Shown: positions 30,939 through 52,952, counted from the stretch's first letter. The stretch: 64,000 bases of DNA from Mobula birostris (GCF_030028105.1 NC_092392.1:6588613-6652612), one strand, 5' to 3'. Notes: generated by a model not told the origin, from the letters alone. Program-made: numbers and translations.

Positions 30939-31320
30939 TTATACGATAGCCTGCAAAGAAAGTGACGAAGTGGTCAGGAGCTGCACCCTACTTTCATGGA
31001 TTGGATCATTATCTGCTGCATTCTTGCTTTTCTGAAGAAGCTTGTTGATATTTGCTTTTATCTTTCCAACCTTAGCACGGGTACTTTGGTCGGGTATGCA
31101 GCTCTCATCCTCCAGGTCTTTTAAAATCGTTCTCAGTATTTTCTGAAGCCATTCCGTGTCATACTTTGGACAGGAAGAGAGCAGTTCTTCGACCTGCGTT
31201 TCAACTCGTTGTAAGAGTTCTTCATCATCTTTGATTTTAGTGATGACTTGCAGCCCACAACATGACTCCACCTGTGCAATGTTTCTCTGTGCAACATCAC
31301 TGAAGTTGTTCGCACATATA
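30939..31320 (-). CDS. Terminal exon: last LRR plus ~100-aa C-terminal helical region, stop TAA
   Basis: Acceptor ttcctgttttcag|T (phase 2); ICANNFSDVAQRNIAQVESCCGLQVITKIKDDEELLQRVETQVEELL...SLQAIV*; frame matches the preceding LRR exon. Confidence 0.85.
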
Positions 31321-32999
31321 CTGAAAACAGGAAGGAAATTATCTTTAGCAGATGCTTCAAGTGTATGTATATACAGAACTGTGTAAAAGTCTTAGGCACA
31401 TAGACAATAGACAATAGGTGCAGGAGTAAGCCATTCGGCCCTTCGAGCCAGCACCACCATTCACTGTGATCATGGCTGATCATCCACAATCAGTATCCAG
31501 TTCCTGCCTTCTCCCCATATCCCACATATAAACAGCTAAGGTGCATAGACCTTTTCACAGCTCTGTATTTGTCAACATAGAGCGGAAACCAAGTTTGTAA
31601 CTCTGGTGGGAGCAAAGGATGTTGGGAATGAATTGCCGCAGGAAGGGTGTGGCACAGGTGGCAGAGAAGGAATGCCGGGACTTTGATTACAAACAATTGG
31701 TTTATTGATCATTACAGAATGTCTCTCTGATGCTTACCACTCCCTCCCCTCTCCTTTCCCCTTTTCCCAACCATGAGTCCACTCTCCCTGCCCCCTTCTT
31801 GTTCTCAGTCCACAGTAGACAGTCCATCAGGCCTCACACAACAGTCTGTCAGGTTTATCGTTACTCACATTGACCCATGGAGTTGTTTTTTTTTGCATCA
31901 GCAGTCCAGTGCAATAATAACATTACTAACCTTAGCTATATATATGTGCCTCAGACCTTTGCACAGTACTGTAAACCAAGAATCAAGAAAACTCAGTTTT
32001 GACCACCTGTGCAAGTTGCAGTAAGGCAAGGGTTAACATAATATCTGGGCAAGGACAGATTGCAGAGAGACCAGGCAATAACGGTCTTTGAAAAGCATAG
32101 CTTCCATTATGCATAACAGATTACTGGAGCCATTTTGGCTTCCTGCAGATGAGAGAAGAATAGAACAAAAAGATGCAAAATACACAGACCAACAAAGGGA
32201 CAATTCCTTTACTAAATTCAAAGTAACATAGCTTGTAGTTTCTATTGACTTTTAACACCTGTTTTGTGAATGTTGATTGATATTGCAAGTAAAAAAATTC
32301 AAGAATACATAGTTTACCAAATGGTCAATATACACAACTGTGCCTGAATTATGTATGAAAATAGCATTTTTCTTTCCTGACTTCAGAACAGTGTAAGTGA
32401 CAAGGGTCACGCTGTTCTACTTGTGCACAAGTCAATTACAGTATGTTTAAGGAATGGGTGTGTGCCTTCAGAGGCCAGTTGATCAGTGATGACACACCTT
32501 ATTGACTTCATTGCCCAGGTCTTGATAAACTCAGAATTGTACAATGAGAGAGTGACCCATCATCCCACTGTGGCCATGCAGCCACTTCAAAACTCTATAA
32601 CCGGTCACACTTCCTGATCTTTCCAGCAAACATGTGAATCTATTGTTCACATACTTATGAATCTCGTTTGAAAAGTTGCATTAAATCTACAGAATAAACA
32701 AAAATTTCCTTGGATTTTATTTTTTCCTAAGTATTTCTGTGTCCTCTCATTCTTTGCTGCCAATAGAAACAATTCATTAACACAAGAGATCCTGCAGATG
32801 CTGGAAATCCAAAGTAACATATACAAAATGCTGGAGGAACTCCACAGCTTGGGCAGCATCTATGCAGAGGAATAAGCAGTTGCTATTTCGTCATTAGCAC
32901 TGGAAAGGAAGGGGGAAGAAGCCAGAATGAGAAGGTGGGAGAATGGGAAGGATTACAAGCCAGCAGGTTATAGGTGAAATCAGGTGTGTGGGTGGGGGA

Positions 33000-34665
33000 G
33001 AGGGGATGACGAGAGAAATTGAATTGTGTAAGGTAAAGGAAACAAGAAGGGTAGTTATGGAAAGTATGACAATTAAAGAAGAGGAAGTACTGGCACTTTT
33101 AAGGAATATAAAAGTGGATAAGTCTGCGGGTCCGGACAAGATATTCCCTAGGACCTTGAGGGAAGTTAGTGTGGAAATAGCAGGGGCTCTGACAGAAATA
33201 TTTCAAATGTCATTAGAAACGGGGATGGTGCCGGAGGATTGGCGTATTGCTCATGTGGTTCCATTGTTTAATAAGGGTTCTAAGAGTAAACCTGGCAATT
33301 ATCAGCCTGTGAGTTTGACGTCAGCGGTGGGTAAATTGATGGAAAGTATTCTTAGAGATGATATATATAATTATCTGGATAGACAAAGTCAACATGGATT
33401 TGTGCATGGAAGGTCATGTTTCACAAATCTTATTGAATTTTTTGATTAGGTTACTAAGAAAGTTGACGAGGGTAAAGTGGTGGATGTTGTCTATATGGAC
33501 TTCAGTAAGGCCTTTGACAGGGTTCTACACGGAAGGTTAGTTAGGAAAGTTCAATCGTTAGGCATTAATATGGAAGTAGTAAACTGGATTCAGCAGTGGC
33601 TAGCTGGGAGATGCCAGACAGTGGTGGTGGATAACTGTGTGTCAGGTTGGAGGACGGTGTCTAGTGGTGTGCCTCAGGGATCGGTACTGGGTCCAATGTT
33701 GTTTGTCATATACATTAATGATCTGGATGATGGGGTAGTAAATTGGATTAGTAAGTATGCAGATGATACTAAGATGGGTGGAGTTGTGGATGATGAGGTG
33801 GGTTTTCAAAACTTGCAGAGATATTTAGGACAGTTAGAAGAGTGGGCTGCAAGATGGCAGATGGAGTTTAATGCTGAAAAATGTGAGGTGCTACATTTTG
33901 GTAGAACTAATCAAAATAAGACATACATGGTAAATGGTAGGGCATTGAAGAATGCTGTAGAACAGAGGGATCTAGGAATAATGGTGCATAGTTCTCTGAA
34001 GATGGAATCTCATGTGGATAGGGTGGTGAAGAAAGCTTTTGGTTTGCTGCCTTTATTAATCAGAGCACTGGGTATAGGAGTTGGGATGTAATGTTGAATT
34101 TGTATGAGGCATTGGTAAGGCCAAATCTGGAGTATTGTGTACAGTTCTGGTCACCGAATTATAGGAAAGATGTCAATAAAATTGAGAGAGTACAGAGGAG
34201 CTTTACTAAAATGTTGCCTGGGTTTCATCTCCTAAGTTAAAGAGAAAGTTTGAACAAGTTAGGTCTTTATTCTTTGGAGCGTAGAAGGCTGAGGGGGGAC
34301 TTGATAGAGGTGTTTAAAATTATGAGGGAGATGGATAGAGTTGACGTGGTTAGACTTTTTCCATTGAGAGTGGGGAAGACTCAAACAAGCGGACATGGGT
34401 TGAGATTTAGAGGACAAAAGTTTAGGGGTAACATGAGGGGGAACTTCTTTACTCAGAGAGTGGTAGCTGTGTGGAATGAGCTTCCAGTAGAAGTGGTTGA
34501 GGCAGGTTCTATGTTGTCGTTTAAAGTTAAATTGGATAGATATATGGACAGGAAAGGAATGGAGGGTTATGGGCTGAGTGCAGGTCGGTGGGACTAGGAT
34601 AGGGTAAGAGTTCGGCACGGACTAGAAGGGCCGAGATGGCCTGTTTCCGTGCTGTAATTGTTATA
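33000..34665 (+). mobile_element. CR1 LINE 3' portion
   Basis: RT 'GVPQGSVLGPMLF.IYINDLD', 'KYADDTK', 'LGLYSLERRRLRGDLIEVFK'; CR1-type 3' end. Confidence 0.92.
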
Positions 34666-35079: not shown

Positions 35080-35985
35080 ATAGACAATAGACAATAGGTG
35101 CAGGAGTAGGCCATTTGGCCCTTCAAGCCAGCACCACCATTCACTGTGATCATGGCACCCACAATCAGTATCTAGTTCCTGCCTTATCCCCATAACCTTT
35201 GATTCCGCCATCTTTAAGAGCTCTATCCATCTCTTTCTTGAAAGCATCCAGAGACTTGGCCTCCACAGCCTTCTGGGGCAGAGCATTCCATACATCCACC
35301 ACTCTCTGGGTGAAAAAGTTTTTCCTCAACTCCGTTCTAAATGGCCTACCCCTTATTCTTAAACTGTGGCCTCTGGTTCTGGACTCACCCATCAGCGGGA
35401 ACATGCTTCCTGCCTCCAGCGTGTCCAATCCTTTAATAGTCTTATATGTTTCAATAAGATCCCCTCTCAGCCTTCTAAATTCCAGAGTATACAAGCCCAG
35501 TTGCTCCAATCTTTCGACATATGACAGTCCCGCCATCCTGGGAATTAACCTTGTGAACCTACGCTGCACTCCCTCAATAGCAAGAATGTCCTTCCTCAAA
35601 TTTGGAGACCAAAACTGCACACAGTACTCCAGGTGTGGTCTCACCAGGGCCCTGTATAGCTGCAGAAGGACCTCTTTGCTCTTATACTCAATTCCCCTTG
35701 TTATGAAGGCCAGCATGCCATTAGCTTTCTTCACAGCCTGCTGTGCTTGCATGCTTGCTTTCAGTGACTGATATACAAGAACACCTAGATCTCCTTGTAC
35801 TTCCCCTTTTCCAAATTTCACTCCATTTAGATAATAATCTGCCTTCCTGTTCTTACCACCAAAGTGGATAACCTCACAATTATCCACATTAAACTGCATC
35901 TGCCATGTATCTGCCCACTCACCCAACCTGTCCAAGTTACCCTGCATTCTCATAACATCCTCCTCACATTTCACACTGCCACCCA
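35080..35985 (-). mobile_element. CR1 LINE 3' fragment
   Basis: 269-aa ORF 'YRALVRPHLEYCVQFWSP..LGLYTLEFRRLRGDLIETYK'. Confidence 0.92.
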
Positions 35986-36129
35986 GCTATCTCTGTATCT
36001 GTGTTACCAGTTGCTCCTTGCCTGGTGCAGAACACCACAGAGGACATGTGCAGGTATACACATGTTGACGTGGATATTTTTGAAATAAACTGCATATCAC
36101 AGGCACACACTCATCTACCAAATACTTAC

Positions 36130-36297
36130 AAGAGTTTCTGGAGAGTTGTGTTCAGTCTCAGGTACTGAATCATGTCCTCTGTGCCATCATCTGTAATCCC
36201 ATTGTCATACAAACGAAGGACTTTGAGACTATTGTTCCCTGCCAGAGCTTTCCACAAAGACCGAGCTCCTGTGGAACCAAAACAGTTTGTACCACAC
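36130..36297 (-). CDS. LRR exon (168 nt, two repeats)
   Basis: Acceptor ctgttttcag|G and donor CTCTT|gtaagt; phase 2-2; CGTNCFGSTGARSLWKALAGNNSLKVLRLYDNGITDDGTEDMIQYLRLNTTLQKL. Confidence 0.92.
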
Positions 36298-36392
36298 CTG
36301 AAAACAGAACCAAACAGCAAATATGAGTGATTACAGTTTCAAGTGAAATATGAAAAATTTTACATGAAGATTTATGTGATGAAAAATCTCAC

Positions 36393-36479
36393 GATAGCGT
36401 CTCTATTCTGCATTCTGGGTTTTGAAGGATACCACTCAAAATCTCTGCTGACTTCTCGGTCAGTTTGTTGGAGCTTATC
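36393..36479 (-). CDS. LRR exon (87 nt)
   Basis: Acceptor ttgtgttccag|G and donor CTATC|gtgaga; phase 2-2; ISSNKLTEKSAEILSGILQNPECRIETLS is a 29-aa RI-type LRR. Confidence 0.9.
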
Positions 36480-36742
36480 CTGGAACACAAGGCAATGAAA
36501 ACGATTAATTTGGAGAACTCCAGCCTCACAAACTGCTGACCGGGAGGACAGCCTGAAAATAAACACTTGGGGCACAGTCAGGAGAACGGAGATAACAAGC
36601 AATGTCTTTCTATTGTTTATAATCTTTTCTATTTATTTATAAATGAATATAATCTTCAGATGGCTATATGATTAAGAGATCCTGTTTCTGTTAGGGGGAG
36701 GGGGAGGGAAATATTTCCTACACAAATCGGATTGAATTCAAC

Positions 36743-36957
36743 CGTGCCCACACTGTGCCCGTACGCACATCCAGTGCCATTACCATAACCATACTCACAC
36801 CCGGTGCCCATACCGTACCCGTACTCGCACCCGATGCCCGTACCGTACCCGTGCTCACACCCAGTGCCCACACCGTACCCTTATACACACACCCAGTGCC
36901 CACACCGTACCCGTACTCACACCCAGTGCCTACACCGTACCCGTACACACACCCAGT
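36743..36957. repeat. 30-bp minisatellite (~7 copies) in an NLR intron
   Basis: Unit ~cacacccagtgcccacaccgtacccgtact. Confidence 0.85.
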
Positions 36958-39009
36958 CATTAATGAAAATATCTAATCAGACAGTCATGTGGTACCAACA
37001 CAAAGCACAAAAGCATGCAGACATGGTCAAGAGGTTCAGTTACAAACAACAGAAAATCTGCAGATGCCGTAAATATAAGCAACACACACAAAATGCTGGA
37101 GGAACTCAGCAGCCCAGGCAGTATCTATGGAAAAGAGTGCAGTCGATGTTTTGGGCTGAGACCCTTCAGCAGGACTGGAGAAAAGGAGATGAGGAGTCAG
37201 AGTTCGAAGGTGGAAGGTGGAGGAGGAGAAACACAAGGTGACAGGTGAAACTGGGAGGGCGAGGAGAGAAGTAAAGAGCAGGGAAGTTGATTGGTGAGAG
37301 AGATAGAAGGCTGGAGAAGGGAGATTCTAAGAGAACAGAAGGCTATGGAAGAAAGAAAAGTGAGGCGAAGCACCAGAGGGTATATAAGGAGATAAGGTGA
37401 GAGAGGGAAAAGGGGATGGGGAATGGTGAAGGAGGGGACATCACCAGAAGTTCAAGAAATCAATGTTCATGCCACCAGGTTAGAGGCTACCCAAATGGAA
37501 TATAAAGTGTTGCTCCTCCAACCTGAGTGTGGCCTCATTGCAACAGTAGAGGAGGCCATGGATGGACATGGTGGAATAGAAATGGGAAGTGGAATTAAGG
37601 TTGGTGGCCACTGGGAGATCCCATTTTTCTAGTGGAGGGTGCGTAGGTGCTTGGCACAAGGAACCTCACTCAAGTGATGATCTGCTAAATCTGAGACCAT
37701 TCTCAGATGAGTAGCTACTTATATAAAATGCCAGACCTACCAAAGAAGCGATCTGTAATCTCGATGTCTGGTTCGCCTCATTTAGCTGGTTCGGACCGGT
37801 CAGAGTTGAGAGACACAAATGTAAGGCTGGGGTGAGCAGAACCATGAAACAATGTTGGCTGTAGCCCTGTACAATGACCAGTAAGGAGGTGATCCAGGTA
37901 GGTCAGGTGACCTTGAGCCAATGGGACGGAGATCCAATGGTTCAATTGATGAGGAACACTATAAGAGGCAGGAGCTCCAAAAACACAGGAGCATTACTCT
38001 CCAGCAACCTGAGACCAGCCTTCATGGATAGGGAGGACCCCACAGACACGTGGAGATCCGGACCATGAGGAATGCCTGGCCAGCGTAGAATCCTCTCCTG
38101 ATAATACCTTTTCTCTTCATTAACTGTTCATGGAGGGTCAGGGATTTTAGTAGGGTGTAGACACATAGTTAGTTTGTGAGCCCATGTTCTTTTTAGTTTG
38201 GACAGTAAAAGTTAATTGTCAGTAAATACAGATTCTCTGTGCCTCATTCTTCATTATTACAAGGGGTGATTCTTGAAACAGTGTGATGTGAGTAGACAAA
38301 TTGCTTTGATTCAGGAATAAACGTTGAAAGAGTCCATTGCTGCTGTTCTGTTGAATGTATGGTGGGCTACGAATTACAGAAAGACCATATTCCCCAGCAA
38401 GTACATTTGCACCAGACAAAGGAAACTAGATCTTTTTATAGAGATCAATAAAGTCTTTGCAAACAGAATGTATGGCCAGAACCAAACAGAACGGTTATGC
38501 CATCAGGAATGGTCGAGGAGAGGGTTATGATTGCACCACATAACTGGTGGGGATACAGTGGAGAACAAGCCCTTCTGGCCCTTCCAGCCACACTGCCCAG
38601 TTACCCGAGCCTAATCATGGGACAATTTACAATGACCAATTCACCGACTAACTGGTGTAACCTTGGACTGTGAGACGAAACCGGATCACCTGGAGGAAAC
38701 CCACACGGAAACGGGAAGGAACATATAAACTTGCTCACTGACGGCACTGGAACTGAACTCTGAACTCTGTAATAGCATCACACTAACTGCTACGCTGCAC
38801 TGGTGGCCTGGTATTTATTGCACTGGTAGTGTCTATTACCATTGTTGCTTTGAAAAGTGGCATCACCACATGAAAGAACGGACTTTGGTCAAGACAGTGC
38901 AGAATCACCAAATTCAGGACAAAGAATGTGAACAGCATATACGCAGAGTATACAACAAAATAAATTACTGCAACTTGGGCTTAGTAGTCTTAAGAAAAGT
39001 ATTACTCAC

Positions 39010-40720
39010 AAAAGTGTTTTGCATTTGAAAAGCACATCCGTCAGCTGCTTTATCCCTTCATCACCGAGGTTACAGAGTCTCAGATCCAACTTTTCCACTG
39101 CAGAGTGTTTCAGGCAGTAATGTAAAGCAGACACGTCCAGGGGGCTCAAAGACATATTGAAAAAATCTATACACTTTACGTATGGAGACACATCAGCTGT
39201 GACATCCGGATCTTGCAATTCAAATAGACAATGCATTAAATTCAGCAATTCTGCCTTGTTAATATCCTGCTCAAGGCTGGTTTTAAACCATGTCCTGAGA
39301 GCTCTGGCTGTAGAAGGAGTGAGAGGAACTGTATAGTTCCACAAATTGCCTTCTCTTCCTGCTGTTAAGGAACCCATGAGAAACCTGGTAAAATTGTACA
39401 GCTTTTCGGTGTGTTCAGGGCGGAATGATTGCAGATAAAATTGACTCAATTGATTTTGTGGCCTCTTCCCAAAGCACCAAAGATCCAGACATTTGACCAG
39501 CTCTACAGGATCCTTATCCAGTAAGGTTGCACAATACAAAGCCGCAAATTGTTCTTTCAGCACCACGTGATGGAACTCAAAAGAACCTTCATCATTATAT
39601 TTCTTTTCCAGAACAAGATTTAAGAGGTACTTTGAAAGCAGAGATTGCTCTATTCTGTAGGCTTTCAGATCAACTGCATTCATTTCAACTTTGGCTGAAA
39701 GCAGGGTGTTGAAGGACAGTTGCCCTACCTTCAGGATGGTGTCCATAAACAATTCATACTCCAGGTCAGTCTCATCAATATCATTGGCTTTACAGTTAAT
39801 CATACAGTAAAGCAGCAATTTAAAAACCGTACTGTTTGTCATTAATGAATCTGGCTTTATTTCATAACAGTGGAAACATCTGTCCAAAATGGTGCACAGA
39901 ATGTAGCTGTTGAGGGGATTAGAAGCCAGGCATTTGATGGTCTCATTCTCCGTAATGTGCTGGTACATTATTGCTGCCTTCTCCTTTTCCGCATAAAACA
40001 TATCACAATATCTTTTCAACCTATCATTGGAAAAGCCAGTGATAATAAGATGCTGATCAAAATGGTTCTTGTTAACTTCTAACTGCTTTGCATTCCATCG
40101 GGAGGTAACCAGCACCTTTGCGTCTCGAAGGAGATGCTTGGATATAAGTTTGGAAACAAGAACGCTTACTTCAGCCACGCTGTCTAGGTTCAAATCACAA
40201 CCCAAAGAATCGCATTGAAGCTGAAAGCCAAATTCGTCAAGTCCATCCAAAATGATCAGCACATCTTGAGGGTTTTGGAGGACCTGCGTTAGGACTGATG
40301 ACAAAGGCTGGCACTGCTTCTTCAGAAGCTCCCGGAGAGTGGTCTTTCCTTTAACCTCATTTAAGTCAGAGAACTTGAGAACAATGACACAATACAACCC
40401 ATGGCTTGGATGAGATGCCCAGTCTTGCTCCATGCTGTCCACAGCCCAACTTTTCCCAACTCCTGTATCACCTACCAGCAGGATTCTCTTCGATGACTTA
40501 TCCTTCTGAAGTAAAGACAGCAGTTCTGAAACTTCCATTTCTTTTGCAATATTCAACACCCCTGCTGTGATAAGGTCACTGCCTGGGTCCTGTTTCTTTA
40601 CAGCGATGGTATTAATGGATCCGGCAAATGAATTGCTGTTCATGAATCTCTTTCGCATCACTGTGCAACATGAACGTGCTTGGTCTCTCAAGATGTATTC
40701 TTTATAATCCTGTATCACAG
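39010..40720 (-). CDS. NACHT/HD1/WHD/HD2 plus first-LRR exon of an NLR (NLRC3/NLRP-like)
   Basis: 570-aa ORF with Walker A GDTGVGKS, Walker B VLIILDGLDEF, sensor-1 VLVTSR, ITGFS, WHD FEFHHVVLKEQFAALY, HD2 LLNLMHCLFELQ and LRR LDLRLCNLGDEGIKQL. Acceptor ctctttctgtccag|CT (phase 1), donor CTTTT|gtgagt (phase 2); 1711 nt. Confidence 0.96.
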
Positions 40721-40769
40721 CTGGACAGAAAGAGACGTTTCTCAGAATTCGTCAGTTTTCTATTACAGA

Positions 40770-42390: not shown

Positions 42391-42459
42391 ACCTTTCACC
42401 ATATTTGTCACCAACAGCACCAGGCTTTTCAGGGAAGAAGTCTAAATGGGAATGCAGAA

Positions 42460-42700
42460 AATGAAACTTCAGTGCAATTTGCAGTTCAGGGTTTTGTCTG
42501 CTTGAAGCATGTTCTCAACCAGCTGCATGTAGCTTGGTGCTCTGGAGTTGCCAAGAAAATCTTCAACACCCTTGAGTGCCTTCCATGTGATTTTCTCTGG
42601 TCCCACAATAAGTTCTTTGAATTGTCTGTCATTAATGATCTGTTTCATTTGTAGACCAACACAAATGCCTTCCTTAATCTTGGCATTAGTTATCCTGGGA
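42460..42700 (-). mobile_element. DNA-transposase fragment, probably Chapaev/CMC type
   Basis: 'FPRITNAKIKEGICVG.Q...FLGN.RAP.Y..LVENML'; family assignment from memory. A partial second copy lies at ~44290-44330. Confidence 0.5.
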
Positions 42701-44637
42701 AACATCTATCTCAAAAATCAAAATCCTTCGCGGAACTTGAGGGAAGAGCTAGGAGAGATGGTGCCAGTGGTTTTTGTAGACCCAGACGACTTCTTCCATT
42801 TCGTCCACGAAACAACTTATTGTTCTTATATCTTTCTTTTCTTTTCAAGGTGGCTGGGATTCTGTCGGAATCCATGATCTATAATTACAGCTCAAACTAC
42901 GGTTTTCCACAAGTGTTGGGATTTTGAACCAGCCGTGCGGCCTGGCGTTTCGATATCTCCAGGAGCAACCTGGAAGATGTGCACCATTGGGGGTGACCCC
43001 ATTCCTCGCAAATTTCGCCAAATAAAGCATCGCAGGAGACTAAAACATCAGGACAGCAGGCAGTGTGCACTACCGTCATAGTCATAATTGGTTTTCATTA
43101 CAGTTGCACCATAAATAATTCAATAGTAATAAAAACCATAAATAATTAAATAGTAATATGTAAATTACGCCAGTAAATTATGAAATAAGTCCAGGACCAG
43201 CCTATTGGCTCAGGGTGTCTGACCCTCCAAGGGAGGAGTTGTAAAGTTTGATGGCCACAGGCAGGAATGACTTCCTATGACGCTCTGTGCTGCATCTCGG
43301 TGGAATGAGTCTCTGGCTGAATGTACTCCTGTGCCCACCCAGTACATTATGTAGTGGATGGGAGAAGGCCACTGTACTCGAGTGATCCCCCTCTCTATCT
43401 CTCGATGGAGAGTGAAAGCCTGTCGGGCATCGAGCTGCAGAAGCAATGCAGAAGGTTGTAACATCAGAACAGCGAGCTGCTGGTTTCCTGCTCTCGTTGG
43501 TGCAGGAGTGATCTCTCTGTTCCTCACTGGTGAAAGCCAGCCTGTCTGAAATACCAAAGTCCTGGGTGATGGGATGTACTACATAATGTACTCTAAATCA
43601 AGGCCTGTTCAGGGGCTTTTGCTATTGGTTGCAAAGTGAGGGGTGGGAGTACCAGTGCTTCTGCTGGTACAAGTGAGGGGAGAATGGGGGGAAGAATGAG
43701 GGGGAGGGAGAGGGAAGGGTCGATGCTTCTGCTGCTTGTGTGTGAGATGGGGAGGAATTTTATCGGGTTCTGATGTTAGTCATTCATTCTTCAGGGTTTC
43801 CTGTTTCATGGATGTCTCTGCGAAGAGTATGAATTTCAGTTGCATACTGTATATGTTCTCTGATATTAAGTTGAACCATTTGCAATCTTTGTAGCTGGTG
43901 ACTGCAGATTTCATCCCTGCAGTCTTGAACCCAGTAATTCTGCTTTTGCCTCTGACAAACCCAAGTCTCTGACCAGCTCATTTAACTCAGACTGAGTTAT
44001 CAGGTGAGGCTCACTCAACATAAAGGATCAAAATCTGTATCAGTATCAGTGTCCTTTTGCATTCCTGCTCATGCATCATGGCATCTTTGTCTGCCTCCTC
44101 TGGACTCCAAGTCCCGTTTTTCTAAAATTGTCTGACCATGCAGCATTTGCCCTGCCTTACCAGGCCCTGGCATCCCTGGACAAGATAGAAAACTTTTCAG
44201 CTTACATTGTGGGCGACATTTTAATTAACCAGAATTATGAATAGGAATAACAAATTAAGGTCATTTAAAAAAAATAGTTTGTGATTTTTTTTCTCTGGTC
44301 CCACAAGAAGTTCTTTGAATTGTCTGTCAAAATTTCATGGTGATTTTTCTGATCAGCAGCCCAAAATTCCTAAGATACACCCAAAAGAATTCAGGAAGCA
44401 AAATCTTTGTTGTCCAATGTTATTCATCCGAAATGATGAAGAGATGACAAAATTCAGGGAACTTCACTTGCTGCCCTAACCCACATCCAAATGCCAGCAT
44501 CTGCTCTTTCACATCACATGGGATATTAGGACAAGCAATTTGTGAGGTCATTATAAACTCATCACTAGATGCTGAAAGACATCCATAATTTTGAAACCAG
44601 GCTGAAATTCATACCCATGTCAAGAAAGTGAAATCTT

Positions 44638-44912
44638 GGGCCGGCTGGTGGCGCAATGACATCAGCGCCGGACCCGGGAGCGGACATTCCCGGGTTCGAA
44701 ACCAGTCGGGTCCGTTCCCGAGTACGCTTTTCATCCGTGCCTGATTGAGTGTCGAGATCGCAACTCGACCTCGTAAAATAAAGGGAAAAATACTGCGAAA
44801 TGTCTGTGTGAGGAGTGGCGCGCCCCGCTGTCTCCCTCTCTCACGCCGCGCCTTGTAAAGGCATGAAAAAGACATCGTCCCGCCAACATCGCACACGCAC
44901 ACACCAAAAAAG
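44638..44912 (+). mobile_element. Young tRNA-derived SINE
   Basis: A-box tggcgcaatg, B-box ggttcgaaacc; 15-bp TSD agaaagtgaaatctt (44623-44637 and 44913-44927); CpG-rich. Confidence 0.85.
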
Positions 44913-45349
44913 AGAAAGTGAAATCTTTAAATTGTCTAGAAAACCTACATCAAATTTTCTAATTCAATTGGATATACTGGGTTCAAGTAAGGGTTAACAA
45001 GATTGTCCAACAAAGCTTTGAAAGGTTACAGGCTTTCATGTCTTAAAGAATAAATAACCACAGAATTAGTTAAGATACTGGATGTTTTCTGAAAGGAGTG
45101 TGCGTGCCTAAGCAAGTCATGGCCTTTTTAACTACTGGTCAATATATACTTCTAAACATTACTGGATTGTTAAAAATGTATATTTTGCGCCTTCTTTCTT
45201 TCAGAAGTCTTCACTTTAAACATTAATTCATTGCTTGACCATATTCTAAAACTATTAATATCACACAGCTCTATGGCTGATTATAGCAGCGGACAAGGAA
45301 ACCACATATACTGTTGTGGGTGGAAACTCTGTGCAATTCATCTCTTTAC

Positions 45350-45379
45350 CTCTTATATCGTCTCCCAGTAAATGGATCT
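45350..45379 (-). CDS. 30-nt juxtamembrane micro-exon
   Basis: Strong acceptor ctgttttttttttcag|AG and donor AGAG|gtaaag; phase 1-1; encodes (K)IHLLGDDIR(A), bridging the TM and NACHT exons in frame. Confidence 0.7.
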
Positions 45380-45959
45380 CTGAAAAAAAAACAGAATAAA
45401 GCACAAGTCAGTGTCTGCTCCTCTGAAAGCATGTTGCATTCTCTGTGGCTGGAACTGGTGGGGAGTTGTAATAACGTCAGCACATTACACTAGGCCTCTT
45501 CACCAGGATAGTGAAGTTCTGTGCCAAAGTACAATGGGCTGATGGGGCTGCAGCCTGCAACTAACGGGCTCCTGGATCAGCTGCACTGAGGACTGGCTTC
45601 GTGGCTGTGGACTCACTTTTGTGAACTTAAGTTATGAATGTTATTTGCCTACTTTATATTGTTTGCACAATTTGTTGTTTTCTGTATATTGGGTGTCTGA
45701 AGGTCTCTTTAATGGGTTCTATTGGTTTTCTTTGTTTTGTGGCTGACTGTAAAGAGACAAATCTCAAGATTACATACTTTGATAATAAATGTACTTTGAA
45801 CTTTAATTTAGCTGGGGTGAACTTAACATAAATGTTTAAATATTTGACAAGGTTTAATAGTAACGTTAGTAAGCTCTTTCAGAAGTCAAACACAATACCT
45901 GTTATGGTGACAGAAAACAAAGAACATTGTTATGTGACCTGTGTGGATCAGTATTGGAA

Positions 45960-46872
45960 GAGCCTCACCCTTTTTCCTCCAAACATAACGATGGTCATTA
46001 TGGCCAAACAGTTCAATTTTTGTTTCATCAGACCAGAGGACATTTCTCCAAAAAGTAAGATCTTTGTCCCCATGTGCACTTGCAAACTGTAGTCTGGCTT
46101 TTTAACAGTGGTTTTGGAGCAGTGGCTTCTTCCTTGCTGAGCAGCCTTTCAGGTTATGTCGATATAGGACTCATTTTACTGTGGATATAGATACTTGTCT
46201 ACCTGTTTCCTCCAGCATCTTCACAAGGTCTTTGCTGTTGTTCTGGGAACGATTTGCACTTTTCGCGCCAAAGTACATTCAACTCTAGGAGACAGAATGC
46301 GTCTCCTGCCTGAGTGGTATGACGGCTGCGTGGTCCCATGGTGTTTATACTTGCATACTATTGTTTGTACAGATGAACGTTGTACTTTCAGGCATTTGGA
46401 AACTGCTCCCAAGGGTGAACCAGACTTGACACCATTTTCTGACCTCAATCCGATAGAAAGTTTGTGGGCAGAACTGAAAAAGCGTGTGCGAGCAAGGAGT
46501 CCTACAAACCTGACTCAGTTACACCAGTTCTGTCTGGAGGAATGGAACAAAATTCCAGCATCTTACTGTGAGAAGCATGTGGAAGGCTACGCTAAATGTT
46601 TGACCCAAGTTAAACAATTTAAAGGCAATGCTACCAAATACTAACAAAGTGTATTTAAACTTCTGACCCACTGGGAAAGTGATGAAAGCAATAAAAGCTG
46701 AAATAAATCATTTGCTCTACTATTATTCTGACATTTCACATTCCTAAAATAAAGTAGTGATCCTAACTGACCTAAGACAGGGAATGTTTCCTTGGATTAA
46801 ATGTCAGGAATTGTGTAAAACTGAGTTTAAGTATATTTGGCTAAGGTGTATGTAAACTTCTGACTTCAACTG
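45960..46872. mobile_element. Sleeping-Beauty-like Tc1 transposon remnant with internal inversion
   Basis: Minus strand 'KSGSPLGAVSKCLKVQRSSVQTIVCKYKHHGTTQPS..' and 'GHNDHRYVWRKKGEA'; plus strand 'DLNPIESLWAELKKRVRAR..KGNATKY*'; TIR tgtaaacttctgacttcaactg followed by TA. Confidence 0.88.
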
Positions 46873-46974: not shown

Positions 46975-47670
46975 TCCAATCTGACTGGGAGATCCTGCGT
47001 CCGGTGCTCCCGATGTGGCCTTCTATATATTGGCGAGACCTGACGCAGATTGGGAGACAGTTTTGCTGAACACCTACGCTCTGTCTGCCAGAGAAAGCAG
47101 GATCTCCCAGTGGCCACACATTTTAATTCCACATCCCATTCCCATTCTGATATGTCTATCCACGGCCTCCTCTACTGTAAAGATGAAGCCACACTCAGGT
47201 TGGAGGAACAACACCTTATATTCCGTCTGGGTAGCCTCCAACCTGATGGCATGAACATTGACTTCCGCTAATGCCCCACCTCCCCCTCGTACCCCATCCG
47301 CTATTTATTTTTATACACACATTCTTTCTCTCACTCTCTCCTTTTTCCCCCTCTGTCCCTCTGACTCTACCCCTTGCCCATCCTCTGGGTTCCCCCTCCC
47401 CTTTTCCTTCTCCCTGGGCCTCCTGTCCCATGATCCTCTTCTATCCCCTTTGCCAATCACCTGTCCAGCTCTTGGCTCCATCCCTCCCCCTCCTGTCTTC
47501 TCCTATCATTTTGGATCTCCCCCCTCCCACTCCCACTTTCAAATCTCTTACTAACTCTTCCTTCAGTTAGTCCTGACGAAGGGTCTCAGCCTGAAACGTC
47601 GACTGTACCTCTTCCTAGAGATACTGCTTGGCCTGCTGCGTTCACCAGCAACTCTGATGTGTGTTGCTTC
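46975..47670 (+). mobile_element. Penelope-like element 3' part (GIY-YIG endonuclease)
   Basis: 'CGLLYIGET...GDSFAEHLRS..PVATHFNS..EEQHLIFRLGSLQPDGMNIDF'; terminal gaagggtctc..gctgcgttcaccagca motif. Confidence 0.85.
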
Positions 47671-49030
47671 AACACCCAATCCAGAATAGCTGATCCCCTA
47701 GTGGGCTCAACCACAAGCTGCTCTAAAAAGCCATCTCGTAGGAATTCTAGGAATTCCCCTTCTTGGAATCCAGCACCAACCTGATTTTCCCAATCTACCT
47801 GCATATCGAAATTCCCCATAACTATTGTAACATTGCCCTTTTGGCATGCATTTTCTATCTCTCGTTGTAACTTGTAGACTACATCCTTGCTAACATTTGG
47901 GGGTCTGTATATGACTCCCATCAGTGTCTTTTTACCCTTACAGTTCCTTAGCTCTATCCACAACAATTCAACACTTTCCGACTCTATGTCACCCCTTTCT
48001 AATGATTTAATTTTATTTTTATTATCAGAGCCACACCATCCCCCCGCCTTCCTGCCGATCCTTTTGATATAATATGTATCCTTGAACATTAAGCTCCCAG
48101 CTATAATCTTCTTTCAGCCATGATTCAGTGATGCCTACAACATCATACTTGCCAATTTGAAACAGTGCTACAAGTTCATAAACCTTATTGCATATACTGT
48201 GCACATTCAAATATAACACCTTTAGTCCTACATTCCGGCCGGCTGGGGGCATAGTGGTATCAGCACCGGACGTCGGAGTGAAGGCTCCCGAGTTCGAATC
48301 CAGCCAGCTCCCTTGCATGCTTTCTATCCGTGCTGGGTTGAGTGTCGAGCTAGCAACTTGGCCTCGTAAAAATAAGAAAGCCTGCTAAAAAAACGCCATC
48401 ATAATGGCGTCCCGATGACTCCACCCAGAGTTAAGGGCTTTCTTCTTCTTCTTCAGTCCTATATTCACCCTTGTGGATTTTGTCTGCCTTTTGTTGTAAC
48501 TCATCCTGTTGACTGTAATTTTGCCCTATGTTCAGCCTCTCCTTGCTAGGAGTCTCAGTACACATTGCCTCTGTTTGTAAACCAACTCATCTTCTGTACT
48601 ATCACTCCGATTCCCATCCCCCTGCCAAATTAGTTTAAATTTCCCCCAAACAACTCCAGCCAACCTGCCCGCAAGGGTATTGGACACCTTCTGGTTCAGA
48701 TGTAACCCATCCCTTTTGTATAGGTCATACCTTCCCCAGAAGAGATTTCAACAATCCATAAATCTGAACCCCTGCCCCCTGCACCAGTTCCTCAGCCATG
48801 CATTCACCTGCCAAATCATTCTATTCTTACCCTCACTGGCACTTGGCACAGGCAACAATCCCAAGATTACTACCCTGGAGATCCCATTTCTCAGCTTTCT
48901 ACCCAGCTCCCTAAAATCTCTCTTCAGGACCTCCTCACCTTGTCTACCTATGTCATTGATGCCAATATGTACCAACACTTCTGGCTGCTCACCCTCACCC
49001 TTGAGAATACCAAGGACATGATCCTAGACA
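47670..49030 (-). mobile_element. CR1 5' region (ORF1 esterase-like plus endonuclease)
   Basis: 'LVHIGINDIGR..VLKRDFRELG', 'KVLYLNVHSICNK..VGITESWL', 'GVIYRPPN'. Confidence 0.8.
48236..48454 (+). mobile_element. tRNA-derived SINE with (TTC)n tail, inserted in CR1
   Basis: B-box gagttcgaatcc; TSD agtccta(c/t)attc (48224-48235 and 48455-48466). Confidence 0.8.
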
Positions 49031-49275
49031 TTCCTGATCATGAACCACGGAGGCAAAATACCATGCGATTGTCTCTATCATACCCACAAAATCTTGTCTT
49101 TGTTCCTCTGTCTAAGGAATCAACTATTAACACTGCAGTCCTCTTTACCTCTCTGCTTTTCTGAGCCACAACACCAGACTCAGTGCCAGAGACCGGACCA
49201 CTGTGGATCTCCCATTGTATCTATAGTTGTACAGTTTGTGTCGCGAGTGCCCAGTTTTCTCAACATGTTACTCAC

Positions 49276-49422
49276 TTTCAAGATCTTGTTGCTTCTTGGA
49301 TTTGATTTGGAAAAGTAAAATTGCAGCTGTGATTAAAACAAACACTACTGCAGGTGGAGATCCATAATGTTGTCTTTCTGAAGCTGGACCAGTGGCATCT
49401 ATTCCATTAATCCGTGATGTAT
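49276..49422 (-). CDS. Stalk plus transmembrane exon
   Basis: Acceptor gttcttaatatcctag|AT and donor GAAA|gtgagt; 147 nt, phase 1-1, open. Translation (D)TSRINGIDATGPASERQHYGSPPAVVFVLITAAILLFQIKSKKQQDLE has a hydrophobic span followed by basic KSKK. Not in the ORF track (too short). Confidence 0.85.
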
Positions 49423-52400: not shown

Positions 52401-52604
52401 GTACTCGTAGAGGCATGTTCAATTATAATATCTGAAAGGCATTTAGAAAGCTACCTGGACGGGAGAGGCACAGAGGAATGTGGGCCTAATGGGACTGGTG
52501 TAGACAGACATCACAGTCGGATGGACAGCATCCTTTTCTGTATGGCGTGATCCAATGTCATTCACTCACTTTGCTTTTACTATCACACCATTTCATGCAC
52601 TCAC

Positions 52605-52952
52605 CATTTAATCTTAATTCCACAATGGTCTCAATGTATTCAGTCCCTTCTTCTTCAAATACAAAGCAGGTGTAGTTACCCACGTCGAATAATGTCACGT
52701 TTTCCAATTTTAGGCTCACATTCCCTTTGAGGAATTCCGAGTGAAACAGCTGAGTGCGGCCTCTGAACTGTGCATCCTGATGCTCTGGATGGTCCAATCC
52801 AGAGTAGAAGCTGTAAGCCACAGTGAGAGTGTCTGTCCGCTGCCACGTGATAACCAGGTTGTGCAGATTGAGGTTGGCTGCAACTGGAAAGGTGCAGGGC
52901 AACAAGACATCTTCATTCAATTTCCCATAGGACTGGGAGAAAGACCCTATAC
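52605..52952 (-). CDS. IgV-domain exon, B7 family (HHLA2/VTCN1/CD276-like); predicted ectodomain of the IgV-TM-NACHT-LRR gene
   Basis: Acceptor tttttactag|GT and donor AATG|gtgagt; 348 nt, phase 1-1, no stop. Translation (G)IGSFSQSYGKLNEDVLLPCTFP...LVITWQR...YSFYSGLDHPEHQDAQFRGRTQLF...GNVSLKLENVTLFDVGNYTCFV...VELRLN has the canonical V-set C, W and D-x-G-x-Y-x-C, plus B7-like 'QD..RGRT.LF..E...GN.SL'. Confidence 0.93.

What the first reader, a model, noticed from the sequence alone, without database searches (positions are those of the whole stretch)
30939..52952. Predicted membrane-spanning NLR: B7-like IgV - TM - NACHT - LRR receptor
Seen: seven minus-strand exons with canonical sites and phases 1-1, 1-1, 1-1, 1-2, 2-2, 2-2, 2-stop. 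Their lengths (348+147+30+1711+87+168+382 = 2873 nt) give one uninterrupted ~957-codon frame. Junctions read ...VELRLN|DTSR..., ...KSKKQQDLE|KIHLLGDDIR|AVIQDYKEY..., ...CKTL|LISSNKL... No CARD, PYD or other death-fold exon is visible between the TM and NACHT exons; those introns are mostly transposon debris. Known: vertebrate NLRs are normally cytosolic with N-terminal effector domains, while B7/HHLA2/VTCN1 proteins are surface IgV(-IgC) ligands with short tails. Inference: exon shuffling at phase-1 introns fused a B7-type ectodomain to a STAND ATPase, so an extracellular or luminal ligand could drive NACHT oligomerisation. I do not know of a characterised vertebrate receptor with this architecture, but could not search.
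Basis: partly seen in the sequence, partly recalled or inferred. Interest (0 to 1): 0.95.

Follow-up and report, generated by a model that had tools for sequence, protein, structure and literature searches.

The report
Membrane-spanning NLR with B7-like ectodomain
The manta ray, like other sharks, rays and a chimaera, has one expressed gene that joins a B7-type cell-surface immunoglobulin domain and a membrane anchor to a complete NOD-like danger sensor, a layout I found described in no paper on vertebrates, whose NOD-like receptors are taken to be soluble cytosolic proteins.

Summary
Observation confirmed and extended. The seven minus-strand exons are real.

- **Domains:** signal peptide, B7-H3/B7-H4-like IgV, TM, conserved ExxxL[LI] motif, NACHT-WHD-HD2, about six LRRs, helical tail.
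- **RNA:** contigs from 4/4 runs splice the 30-nt micro-exon to the NACHT exon. A skate cDNA contig carries the whole fusion in one ORF.
- **Distribution:** models from 19 cartilaginous-fish species fall in this clade. V-set+NACHT is confirmed in 17, including Callorhinchus.
- **Origin:** the sister clade is frog/lizard CARD-NACHT-LRR genes. The frog gene has the same 87- and 168-nt LRR exons and the same intron phases, so leader-IgV-TM exons replaced CARD exons in frame.
- **Short isoform:** a B7-like-only isoform (manta 224 aa predicted, skate 214 aa) arises by read-through of the micro-exon donor.

Signalling direction is unresolved. I found no paper describing it. Sea-cucumber AjNLRC4 is an invertebrate analogue that lacks LRRs. 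The scan noted a different IgSF-TM-CARD-NLR elsewhere in this genome (s1-145040).

The parts
54273..54333 (-). It runs from the ATG at 54333 and encodes MDFTLERILLAFVLFRELEM plus the first base of a Gly codon. It ends in a phase-1 donor (GTGAGT). This is the predicted signal peptide.
   Evidence: tblastn of the Mobula hypostoma orthologue. Sequence and translation. With it the ORF equals XP_072097187.1.
52605..52952 (-). IgV exon (348 nt, phase 1-1). B7-type V-set domain with Cys40, Trp57 and Cys116, and NxS/T sequons at N98, N105, N113 and N136.
   Evidence: Pfam V-set 4e-10. Best solved relatives are CD276/B7-H3 3e-25, VTCN1/B7-H4 3e-18, PD-L1, MOG and BTN3A. Cys/Trp/Cys are invariant in 14 orthologues. 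RNA runs hold the exon but not its flanking intron.
49276..49422 (-). Stalk plus transmembrane exon (147 nt, phase 1-1). It encodes the TM helix PAVVFVLITAAILLFQI followed by KSKKQQDLE.
   Evidence: Kyte-Doolittle maximum 2.1 at aa 158-176, with a basic stretch on the C-terminal side. AlphaFold helix 161-177.
45350..45379 (-). 30-nt cytoplasmic micro-exon (phase 1-1) encoding KIHLLGDDIR. It supplies the LL of the conserved E185-x-x-x-L189-L190 acidic dileucine motif.
   Evidence: Joint 45350|40720 with GT..AG ends is seen in 4/4 RNA runs, with the whole 30 nt on the short side. E-x-x-x-L-L occurs in all 12 models aligned across this stretch (L189/L190 invariant, E185 at least 90%). Callorhinchus has ERAALI.
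45261..45349 (-). Intron sequence read through from the micro-exon donor. It adds GKEMNCTEFPPTTVYVVSLSAAIISHRAV and a stop (ends at 45261), giving a predicted 224-aa B7-like-only isoform (signal peptide, IgV, TM, short tail).
   Evidence: Translation. A 260-nt RNA contig covers 45121-45378 at about one tenth of the main contig's depth in run X1. Five skate transcript contigs encode the analogous 214-aa product.
39010..40720 (-). Large exon (1711 nt, phase 1-2). It holds the pre-NACHT linker, the NACHT NBD (Walker A GDTGVGKS, Walker B LIILDGLDE), HD1, WHD (invariant His580), HD2 and the first LRR.
   Evidence: Pfam NACHT 8e-23, NLRC4_HD2 1e-15, NOD2_WH. Invariant motif residues across 36 NLRs. 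The fold matches ADP-bound NOD2 and closed NLRP3.
36393..36479 (-). LRR exon (87 nt, phase 2-2).
   Evidence: Splice sites and frame. The exon at the same position in the frog CARD-NLR gene has the same length and phase.
36130..36297 (-). LRR exon (168 nt, phase 2-2).
   Evidence: Pfam LRR_6. The exon at the same position in the frog CARD-NLR gene has the same length and phase.
30939..31320 (-). Last coding exon (382 nt, phase 2 to stop TAA at 30941-30939). It holds the last LRR and a conserved helical tail of about 80 aa (helices 884-899, 906-920, 929-954).
   Evidence: Translation. AlphaFold model. The tail is 44-63% conserved between manta and skates/sharks. The frog CARD-NLR ends in a comparable acidic tail.

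Best explanation
SHOWN. The window holds most of one expressed Mobula birostris gene. It has 8 coding exons, and an alternative 5' exon lies beyond the window. Its main product is a 977-aa type I membrane protein:
- a cleavable leader and one B7-H3/B7-H4-like IgV domain outside the cell or in a lumen;
- a single TM helix;
- a cytoplasmic juxtamembrane segment with a conserved acidic dileucine motif (ExxxL[LI]);
- a complete NLR switch: NACHT with intact Walker A/B, WHD with the conserved His, HD2, about six RI-type LRRs and a helical tail;
- no CARD, PYD or other known cytosolic effector domain.

The gene is old. Models from 19 cartilaginous-fish species fall in this clade. The V-set+NACHT pair is confirmed in 17 of them, including the chimaera Callorhinchus. 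The gene tree follows the species tree among batoids, and the chimaera branches outside the elasmobranch orthologues.

Its nearest relatives outside cartilaginous fish are frog and lizard CARD-NACHT-LRR genes. The frog gene shares the 87- and 168-nt LRR exons and all intron phases. The gene therefore arose when phase-1 leader, IgV, TM and tail exons of a small B7/MOG-like gene replaced the phase-1 CARD and linker exons.

Read-through of the micro-exon donor gives a short IgV-TM-only isoform.

INFERRED (mechanism, about 0.4). In NLRs the C-terminal LRR/NACHT senses and oligomerises, and the N-terminal domain is the output that gets clustered. Here the output position is held by TM-IgV. I propose that the cytosolic LRR-NACHT detects a cytosolic or membrane-proximal cue. 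ATP-dependent oligomerisation would then cluster the B7-like IgV on the other side of the membrane into a multivalent ligand for a conserved partner, such as a lymphocyte receptor. This is inside-out signalling, as in butyrophilin BTN3A1. The dileucine motif would control surface versus endosomal residence.

The stated confidence refers to the whole statement including this inferred direction. The shown part alone I put at 0.95 or higher.
For: **Gene model.**
- Canonical sites, one open frame and the leader exon.
- 100% identity to XP_072097187.1.

**RNA evidence.**
- The joint 40720|45350 is seen in 4/4 runs.
- It lies on contigs of 1.8-3.2 kb. Three of them carry 714-803 nt 5' of the NACHT exon, where 586 nt of CDS are needed.
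- Three of those runs (X1-X3) hold the IgV exon without its flanking intron.
- Skate contig L001 carries the whole fusion as one 2949-nt ORF.

**Domains and motifs.**

**Conservation.**
- IgV is 54-67% identical between manta and skates/sharks, similar to the NBD at 58-73%. Signal peptide, stalk and TM are 11-45%.
- V-set+NACHT models in many species, including Callorhinchus.
- Same exon order in the bamboo-shark genome.

**Origin.**
- Trees give a chondrichthyan clade at 100 and a CARD-NLR sister clade at 97-99 SH-aLRT.
- CARD in the sister clade.
- Frog gene exon lengths and phases.
- No CARD relic and no IgC exon in the window.

**For the inside-out direction (inference).**
- The full autoinhibited switch and the LRR are retained, whereas the characterised outside-in analogue AjNLRC4 lacks LRRs (PMC8699970).
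- No cytosolic effector domain was found.
- The IgV-TM occupies the former CARD position.
- B7-family IgV domains are ligands, and butyrophilins signal inside-out (both from established knowledge).
- The IgV is under purifying selection, not diversifying.
Against: - No experiment or localisation data exist. Topology rests on hydrophobicity, the positive-inside rule and homology, not on SignalP/DeepTMHMM.
- The RNA evidence in manta is from assembled contigs, not single molecules. Only the micro-exon-to-NACHT joint was seen directly.
- The short isoform would display the same IgV constitutively. An inside-out signal would then have to rest on clustering or avidity alone.
- The conserved dileucine motif suggests endocytosis or endolysosomal residence, which fits a luminal sensor as well.
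- The conserved C-terminal helical tail could be an unrecognised cytosolic effector.
- No counter-receptor is known.
Confidence: 0.4

Rival explanations
1. Outside-in receptor. The IgV binds an extracellular or luminal ligand, either microbial or host. Ligand-driven clustering brings the cytosolic NACHT modules together, and their oligomer starts a cytosolic response such as endocytosis, cytoskeletal change or recruitment through the helical tail.
For: - The type I topology places the IgV outside and the NACHT inside.
- A characterised analogue works this way. Sea-cucumber AjNLRC4 binds Vibrio through extracellular Ig domains, oligomerises and drives actin-dependent uptake (PMC8699970).
- The conserved ExxxL[LI] motif would suit ligand-induced internalisation.
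Against: - AjNLRC4 lacks LRRs. Here the whole ADP-locked switch with LRR, WHD His and HD2 is conserved, and clustering alone is not known to open it.
- No cytosolic effector domain is present to pass a signal on.
- The IgV is conserved like a housekeeping interface at 54-67%, not diversified like a pathogen binder.
- B7-family IgV domains are ligands rather than pattern receptors (established knowledge).
Confidence: 0.3
2. Membrane-anchored cytosolic NLR without transmembrane signalling. The IgV-TM-dileucine module only places the NACHT-LRR on the plasma or endolysosomal membrane, as palmitoylation does for NOD1/NOD2. The NLR senses or regulates there, perhaps as a regulatory NLR like NLRX1 or NLRC3. 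The IgV would serve sorting or cis-interactions.
For: - The dileucine sorting motif is conserved from chimaera to manta.
- Best structural matches include NLRX1, which carries a targeting sequence instead of an effector domain.
- One sawshark paralogue isoform (P0012) has a TM and NACHT but no IgV.
Against: - The IgV is about as conserved as the NACHT, while stalk, TM and leader drift freely. A mere anchor would not need that.
- A separate short isoform keeps exactly the IgV-TM part. This suggests the ectodomain has a function of its own.
Confidence: 0.2
3. Annotation or assembly chimera. A small B7-like gene and a separate NLR gene lie next to each other, and their frames are compatible by accident. 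The full-length product is not made, or only as rare read-through.
For: - A short IgV-TM-only transcript exists.
- All the 5' exons are phase 1-1, so frames would fit by chance more easily than usual.
- The manta evidence is from assembled contigs.
Against: - The micro-exon-to-NACHT joint is the only listed joint into 40720 in 4/4 runs. Its contig has about ten times the depth of the read-through contig in X1.
- A 3.3-kb skate contig holds the complete fusion ORF.
- The NACHT exon starts in phase 1 with no ATG-bearing exon of its own and no CARD exon.
- The architecture is kept across sharks, rays and a chimaera.
Confidence: 0.02

Closest known systems
Unnamed CARD-NACHT-LRR genes of anurans and a lizard (RefSeq 'NLRC3-like' / 'NLRP12-like', e.g. 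Spea bombifrons P0016, Lacerta agilis P0019)
   Same: - Sister clade in the NACHT tree (97-99 SH-aLRT).
- About 30% identity over the NACHT exon and similar length, about 945 aa.
- Same NACHT-WHD-HD2-short LRR layout.
- The frog gene has identical 87- and 168-nt LRR exons and identical intron phases 1-2, 2-2, 2-2, 2-stop.
   Different: They start with a CARD exon and two small phase-1 linker exons, and have no leader, IgV or TM. They are soluble CARD-type NLRs. A long stem branch (1.6 substitutions per site) separates the two clades.
B7 family IgV domains: CD276/B7-H3, VTCN1/B7-H4, PD-L1; also MOG and butyrophilins
   Same: - Best solved-structure sequence matches: CD276 3e-25, VTCN1 3e-18, PD-L1 7e-13, MOG 2e-12, BTN3A1 5e-10.
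- Canonical Cys-Trp-Cys and the DxGxYxC motif.
- Leader, IgV and TM on separate phase-1 exons, giving a type I topology.
- The short isoform is a plain B7/MOG-like membrane protein.
   Different: There is no membrane-proximal IgC domain. The long isoform's cytoplasmic part is an 800-aa NLR instead of a short tail or a B30.2 domain. No receptor is known.
Butyrophilin BTN3A1/BTN2A1 (IgV-IgC-TM-B30.2), as a working analogy
   Same: A B7-type ectodomain is joined through one TM to an intracellular sensor domain. In butyrophilins the intracellular sensing event is read out by lymphocytes through the ectodomain (inside-out; established knowledge). The IgV is related by sequence.
   Different: The intracellular module here is a STAND ATPase with LRRs, not B30.2/SPRY. 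Inside-out signalling is only inferred here.
Sea-cucumber AjNLRC4 (Ig-Ig-TM-NACHT-TM), PMC8699970; also AjNLR-new, PMC13133943
   Same: It has extracellular Ig domain(s), a membrane span and an intracellular NACHT in one polypeptide. It is experimentally located in the membrane and oligomerises.
   Different: It is an invertebrate protein with two TM helices, no LRR and no HD2/LRR autoinhibition. Independent origin is inferred, not tested, because the chondrichthyan protein's nearest relatives are vertebrate CARD-NLRs and AjNLRC4 itself was not aligned here.
Anthozoan TMD-NLRs (3-5 N-terminal TM helices), PMC5094078
   Same: These are NLRs predicted to be membrane-bound through N-terminal TM segments.
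   Different: They are multi-pass with no Ig ectodomain, and they are cnidarian-specific. That paper states that all other metazoan NLRs are cytosolic.
NOD2, NOD1, NLRX1 and NLRP3 (mammalian NLRs)
   Same: - The predicted fold matches ADP-bound rabbit NOD2 (Foldseek 9e-30, TM 0.60 by target) and closed NLRP3.
- NLRX1, NOD1 and NOD2 are the top AlphaFold DB hits.
- Like NLRX1 it carries an N-terminal targeting device instead of a death-fold domain, and helices after the LRR.
   Different: Only 16-20% identity and no one-to-one orthology. None of them has a signal peptide, an ectodomain or a TM helix.

Membership tests
NLR (NACHT-LRR) family | NACHT NTPase domain with Walker A (GxxxxGK[ST]) and Walker B (hhhhDGxDE) | tested here: met
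   Pfam NACHT 81.5 bits against a cutoff of 26.7. G279, G282, G284, K285 and D354, G355, D357, E358 are invariant across 36 NLRs.
NLR (NACHT-LRR) family | Winged-helix domain with the ADP-contacting His, and helical domain HD2 | tested here: met
   NLRC4_HD2 58.8 bits against a cutoff of 33.1. NOD2_WH 19 bits, below its cutoff of 23.1. His580 is invariant in 36 sequences. The fold matches ADP-bound NOD2.
NLR (NACHT-LRR) family | C-terminal ribonuclease-inhibitor-type leucine-rich repeats | tested here: met
   LRR_6 26.6 bits for the whole protein against a cutoff of 23.4. Matches to ribonuclease inhibitor and the NLRX1 LRR. Six strand-helix repeats at 712-877 with pLDDT about 90.
NLR (NACHT-LRR) family | Soluble cytosolic protein with an N-terminal CARD, PYD, BIR or acidic effector domain (basis of the NLRA/B/C/P classes) | tested here: not met
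   The N-terminus is leader plus V-set IgV plus TM. There is no CARD/PYD hit in the protein or anywhere in the window.
B7 / butyrophilin IgSF ligands | N-terminal V-set domain of the B7 type | tested here: met
   CD276 3e-25, VTCN1 3e-18, PD-L1, MOG, BTN3A. An exhaustive search gives B7-H3/butyrophilin-like multi-Ig proteins as the nearest non-NLR relatives.
B7 / butyrophilin IgSF ligands | Membrane-proximal IgC domain after the IgV | tested here: not met
   Only one Ig exon is in the window. B7/BTN-like queries hit 52605-52952 only. The protein goes from IgV through a stalk of about 25 aa into the TM.
B7 / butyrophilin IgSF ligands | Type I membrane topology with a cleaved leader | tested here: inconclusive
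   Hydrophobic leader, one TM with Kyte-Doolittle 2.1 and basic residues after it, conserved in orthologues. No dedicated predictor or experiment was available.
B7 / butyrophilin IgSF ligands | Binds a CD28-family or other lymphocyte receptor | not testable with these tools
   This needs IgV-Fc staining or a binding screen.
Echinoderm Ig-TM-NACHT receptors (AjNLRC4 type) | Extracellular Ig, membrane span and intracellular NACHT in one chain | tested here: met
   Met by prediction only. AjNLRC4's architecture is taken from PMC8699970.
Echinoderm Ig-TM-NACHT receptors (AjNLRC4 type) | No LRR, and a second TM after the NACHT | tested here: not met
   LRRs are present. There is a single TM, with no other segment above Kyte-Doolittle 1.4.
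Echinoderm Ig-TM-NACHT receptors (AjNLRC4 type) | Common descent of the fusion | not tested
The chondrichthyan clade's sister is vertebrate CARD-NLRs, which suggests independent origin.
NLRX1-like NLRs | LRR followed by a C-terminal three-helix bundle (LRRCT), with an N-terminal organelle-targeting sequence instead of an effector domain | tested here: inconclusive
   NLRX1 is the top AlphaFold DB hit (4.6e-33, 17% identity), aligned up to residue 952. The NLRX1 C-terminal fragment 3UN9 matches the LRR at 4e-15. The model has three helices after the LRR. The E-values are not clearly better than for NOD1 or NOD2.

The most novel reading that the evidence does not exclude
A single polypeptide links innate cytosolic sensing to lymphocyte recognition. 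The LRR-NACHT switch detects a cytosolic cue and, by oligomerising, turns its own B7-like ectodomain into a clustered surface ligand. That would be butyrophilin logic built on a STAND ATPase. It would have arisen at the base of cartilaginous fish, close to the origin of adaptive immunity, with a short IgV-only isoform acting as a constitutive competitor or tuner.
Probability: 0.3. Interest if true: 0.95.

Novelty: new variant of a known kind. Interest (0 to 1): 0.78.

Why it matters
Vertebrate NLRs are defined in the literature as cytosolic sensors. They are classed by N-terminal effector domain: acidic, BIR, CARD, PYD or 'X' (PMC13133943). PMC5094078 states that metazoan NLRs outside anthozoans are exclusively cytosolic.

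This gene is a counter-example in jawed vertebrates. It is conserved across cartilaginous fish, expressed and under purifying selection. A B7-type ectodomain and a TM helix sit where the CARD was.

- It would add a membrane-spanning class to vertebrate NLRs.
- It gives a dated, exon-level example of domain swapping between the IgSF and STAND families.
- It makes an open question testable in skate or catshark cells: can a NACHT switch pass information across a membrane, and in which direction?
- If the ectodomain is a lymphocyte ligand, it would be a direct physical link between innate sensing and B7-type co-signalling.

The gene sits in RefSeq under four different misleading names: NLRP1 homolog, NLRP6-like, NLRC3-like and NOD1-like. 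That may explain why I found no paper on it.

Tried and rejected
- **Two-gene or chimeric model.** Rejected by the RNA joints, the skate cDNA contig and conservation.
- **Relic CARD exon or IgC exon in the introns.** None found by tblastn with four CARD N-termini and eleven B7/BTN-like proteins.
- **Other IgV+NACHT proteins among the nearest IgV relatives.** Eight long hits of the exhaustive search were scanned. All are multi-Ig B7-H3/butyrophilin-like, and none has a NACHT.
- **Mammalian orthologue.** None. NLRX1, NOD1, NOD2, NLRP3, NLRP6 and NLRP9 all match at 16-20% identity with similar scores.
- **Neighbouring genes as donor.** No other gene is called within 10 kb either side in the manta assembly. 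Long ORFs (at least 90 aa) across 1-30000 are largely transposon-derived, e.g. LINE endonuclease and reverse-transcriptase ORFs.
- **N-terminal word-based search (region 1-200).** It returned only batoid orthologues and one butyrophilin, so it was uninformative.
- **Literature.** Six full-text searches found no description of a vertebrate Ig-TM-NLR. The whale-shark NLR survey does not mention it. Subscription journals are not covered.
- **Fetching manta and catshark loci as DNA.** This failed because the files were too large. Look-up of the 977-aa isoform failed because only the longest product is indexed.
- **First attempts at chaining the frog exons** failed on an anchor error and were redone junction by junction.
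- **The search for related loci was not used.** Its collections hold no vertebrate genomes.

Full report
**1. The observation**

The seven minus-strand exons exist exactly as listed: 52952-52605, 49422-49276, 45379-45350, 40720-39010, 36479-36393, 36297-36130 and 31320-30939. Every acceptor is AG and every donor GT. The lengths are 348/147/30/1711/87/168/382 nt. The joined 2873 nt are open in one frame up to a single terminal stop.

Because the first listed exon enters in phase 1, it cannot be the first coding exon. tblastn with the closest orthologue located a leader exon at 54333-54273. It starts with ATG, encodes MDFTLERILLAFVLFRELEM plus one base, and ends in a phase-1 GTGAGT donor. With it the CDS is 2934 nt, or 977 codons plus stop.

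[quoted passage not shown] The window is therefore giant manta DNA, and NCBI's automatic annotation already holds this exact model under a misleading name.

**2. Domain content**

- **Pfam.** V-set in the first listed exon (4e-10). NACHT (8e-23, 81.5 bits), NOD2_WH and NLRC4_HD2 (1e-15) in the large exon. LRR_6 in the following exons.
- **Membrane span.** The only strongly hydrophobic segment after the leader is PAVVFVLITAAILLFQI (aa 158-176, Kyte-Doolittle 2.1). KSKKQQ follows it, so the C-terminal 800 residues are predicted to be cytosolic.
- **IgV.** It has the canonical Cys40, Trp57 and Cys116, and NxS/T sequons. Its best solved relatives are CD276/B7-H3 (3e-25), VTCN1/B7-H4 (3e-18), PD-L1, MOG and BTN3A. 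'B7-like' is therefore correct.
- **NACHT.** Walker A (GDTGVGKS) and Walker B (LIILDGLDE) are intact. The WHD histidine (His580) is invariant in a 36-sequence NLR alignment.
- **Structure.** An AlphaFold model (pLDDT 73; LRR and tail about 85-95) shows six LRR units and three C-terminal helices. Foldseek matches ADP-bound rabbit NOD2 (9e-30), closed NLRP3, and NLRX1/NOD1/NOD2 in AlphaFold DB, all at 16-20% identity. No mammalian orthologue stands out.
- **No death-fold domain.** There is no CARD or PYD in the protein, and no relic CARD exon or second Ig exon anywhere in the window.

**3. Is it one transcript?**

I laid the contigs of four runs, flagged 'RNA?' by the tool, on 40001-46000.
- The joint 40720|45350 (CT..AC on the plus strand, which is GT..AG on the minus strand) appears in 4/4 runs.
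- The whole 30-nt micro-exon lies on its short side.
- It is the only listed joint into the NACHT exon's acceptor.
- The contigs are 3200, 2714, 3111 and 1772 nt long. They carry 803, 748, 714 and 60 nt 5' of the NACHT exon, where 586 nt are needed for leader, IgV, TM and micro-exon.

Three of those runs (X1-X3) hold 0.65 of the words of IgV exon plus or minus 100 nt. That is the exon (348/548) without its flanking intron.

Independently, a 3341-nt assembled contig from run SRR11241622 (L001) carries the skate orthologue as one uninterrupted 2949-nt ORF, from leader and IgV to the tail. The manta and bamboo-shark genes are split by at least five mapped introns over more than 20 kb. The skate contig is therefore cDNA.

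Caveat: these are assembled contigs, not single molecules, and only one manta joint was seen directly.

**4. Conservation**

Models from 19 cartilaginous-fish species fall in this clade. V-set+NACHT is confirmed in 17:
- Batoids: Mobula birostris and M. hypostoma, Hypanus, Hemitrygon, Pristis, Narcine.
- Sharks: Pristiophorus, Heterodontus, Heptranchias, Mustelus, Scyliorhinus canicula and S. torazame, Stegostoma, Chiloscyllium.
- Chimaera: Callorhinchus milii (48% identity).
- By sequence rather than a listed Pfam hit: Leucoraja and Amblyraja. The Rhinoraja model has a conserved IgV-like N-terminus with the Ig Cys and Trp, but no listed V-set hit.
- Rhinoptera, likewise, is in the clade but its V-set hit was not confirmed.

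In the bamboo-shark genome the IgV, TM, NACHT, LRR and last exons lie in the same order on one strand over 21 kb.

Maximum-likelihood trees put all of these in one clade (100 SH-aLRT). The branching follows the species tree among batoids, while the basal shark branches are unresolved. Callorhinchus and a sawshark paralogue are unresolved at the base, outside the elasmobranch orthologue clade (97 SH-aLRT).

Between manta and skates or sharks:

| Region | Identity |
|---|---|
| IgV | 54-67% |
| NBD | 58-73% |
| LRR | 55-71% |
| Leader, stalk, TM | 11-45% |

. The ectodomain is therefore under purifying selection in its own right.

In the otherwise variable juxtamembrane segment, E-x-x-x-L-L is present in all 12 models aligned there. 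L189 and L190 are invariant and E185 is at least 90% conserved. Callorhinchus has ERAALI. This matches the [DE]xxxL[LI] adaptor-binding sorting signal known from established cell biology. The LL is encoded by the micro-exon.

**5. Origin**

The sister clade (97-99 SH-aLRT) consists of frog and lizard genes annotated 'NLRC3-like' or 'NLRP12-like'. They are CARD-NACHT-WHD-HD2-short LRR proteins of about 945 aa with about 30% identity.

I mapped the Spea bombifrons gene (L003):

| Exon | Coordinates | Length and phase |
|---|---|---|
| CARD | 2001-2328 | phase-1 donor |
| linker 1 | 2689-2784 | 96 nt, 1-1 |
| linker 2 | 3557-3598 | 42 nt, 1-1 |
| NACHT | 3913-5713 | 1801 nt, 1-2 |
| LRR | 6066-6152 | 87 nt, 2-2 |
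| LRR | 6439-6606 | 168 nt, 2-2 |
| last | 6975-7290 | to stop |

. From the NACHT exon onward, the manta and frog genes have the same phases, and two exons have exactly the same length. All introns 5' of the NACHT exon are phase 1 in both. Leader, IgV and TM exons of IgSF genes are phase 1-1.

The leader, IgV, TM and tail exons of a small B7/MOG-like gene replaced the CARD and linker exons of a CARD-NLR. This happened before the chimaera-elasmobranch split. Small leader-IgV-TM proteins of this kind exist as separate genes, for example a 207-aa 'MOG-like' lungfish protein 42% identical to the IgV exon.

**6. A second product**

Five skate transcript contigs (1.1-1.7 kb) encode a 214-aa protein. 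It is 95-96% identical to the skate full-length proteins through the micro-exon (the contigs come from an unidentified skate) and then ends in GSPSSLTAHSAA-stop. This is read-through of the micro-exon donor.

In manta the same read-through gives a predicted 224-aa protein with its stop at 45261. One RNA contig (45121-45378) shows the read-through at about a tenth of the main contig's depth. The gene thus makes both a plain B7-like membrane protein and the IgV-TM-NLR.

**7. Mechanism**

Shown: the architecture, its expression, its age, the intact ATPase and autoinhibition motifs, and the lack of a known cytosolic effector domain.

Inferred: the direction of signalling. I favour inside-out (about 0.4).
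- In NLRs the LRR/NACHT senses and oligomerises, and the N-terminal domain is the clustered output. Here that position is taken by TM-IgV.
- The full LRR-WHD-HD2 lock is retained. The characterised outside-in analogue AjNLRC4 has no LRR.
- B7 IgV domains are ligands.
- Butyrophilins provide a precedent for a B7-type ectodomain reporting an intracellular sensing event.

It fits the dileucine motif and the echinoderm precedent. A pure anchoring or regulatory role (about 0.2) fits NLRX1-like features, but it does not fit the strong conservation of the IgV.

**8. Novelty**

Six full-text searches found no description of a vertebrate Ig-TM-NLR. The whale-shark NLR survey does not mention one. The literature treats vertebrate NLRs as cytosolic.

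Invertebrate membrane NLRs are known: sea-cucumber AjNLRC4 and AjNLR-new, and anthozoan TMD-NLRs. The chondrichthyan gene has LRRs and a single TM. Its relationship to the echinoderm genes was not tested. Its nearest relatives being vertebrate CARD-NLRs suggests independent origin.

The gene models are public but misnamed. The scan's notes also record a different IgV-IgC1-TM-CARD-NACHT-LRR gene on another piece of this genome (s1-145040). It did not appear among close relatives of this NACHT, so it is not a close paralogue. I could not examine it.

**Verdict:** a real new variant of a known kind, of high interest to comparative immunology. Its mechanism is still to be tested.

Noticed in passing
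window 45261-45379 (minus strand): Read-through of the micro-exon donor gives a predicted 224-aa leader-IgV-TM-short-tail isoform. One low-depth RNA contig (45121-45378) supports it in manta. Five skate transcript contigs encode the analogous 214-aa protein (P0070 cluster).
   Followed up: partly
P0012 (Pristiophorus japonicus); P0057 versus P0059 (Amblyraja radiata): Paralogues exist. A sawshark paralogue isoform has a short N-terminus, a TM helix and a NACHT but no IgV, and branches at the base of the clade. The thorny skate has two copies on different chromosomes.
   Followed up: partly
another piece of the same genome (scan note s1-145040): The scan recorded a different membrane NLR, IgV-IgC1-TM-CARD-NACHT-LRR. 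It did not turn up among relatives of this NACHT at E<=1e-10. Cartilaginous fish may therefore have made IgSF-TM-NLR fusions more than once.
   Followed up: no
L003 (Spea bombifrons, CM049781.1) and P0015-P0019, P0220: An unnamed CARD-NACHT-short LRR-acidic tail NLR clade occurs in anurans and a lizard, annotated variously as NLRC3-like or NLRP12-like. No obvious mammalian orthologue was seen among the hits.
   Followed up: partly
window 25017-28742 (minus strand), 32943-34091 (plus), 35165-35974 (minus), 46195-46644 (plus), 47586-48318 (minus): The introns and the 3' flank are full of transposon ORFs. These include a LINE with a 468-aa endonuclease-like ORF plus reverse-transcriptase ORFs, further RT fragments, a transposase-like fragment and a LINE endonuclease fragment. 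The identifications rest on reading the ORF translations only.
   Followed up: no
window 42001-42400 and 43001-43400: RNA-run contig depth is in the tens of thousands here, against 13-89 for the NACHT exon. These are presumably highly repeated or transcribed repeat families inside the intron.
   Followed up: no
window 36656-36976: ORF translations on both strands show a repeated GYG-(T/V)GTGCEY-type unit. This looks like a minisatellite in the intron between the NACHT exon and the first LRR exon. It was not run through a tandem-repeat finder.
   Followed up: no
P0173 (Protopterus annectens, 207 aa): A small lungfish 'MOG-like' leader-IgV-TM protein is 42% identical to the IgV exon. It is an example of the kind of stand-alone gene that could have donated the 5' exons.
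   Followed up: no
beyond window end (>64000, minus strand): RefSeq isoform X1 (991 aa) adds MSDSCSNVGGRKLT from an upstream exon that is not in the window. The annotated gene range is 36.6 kb.
   Followed up: partly
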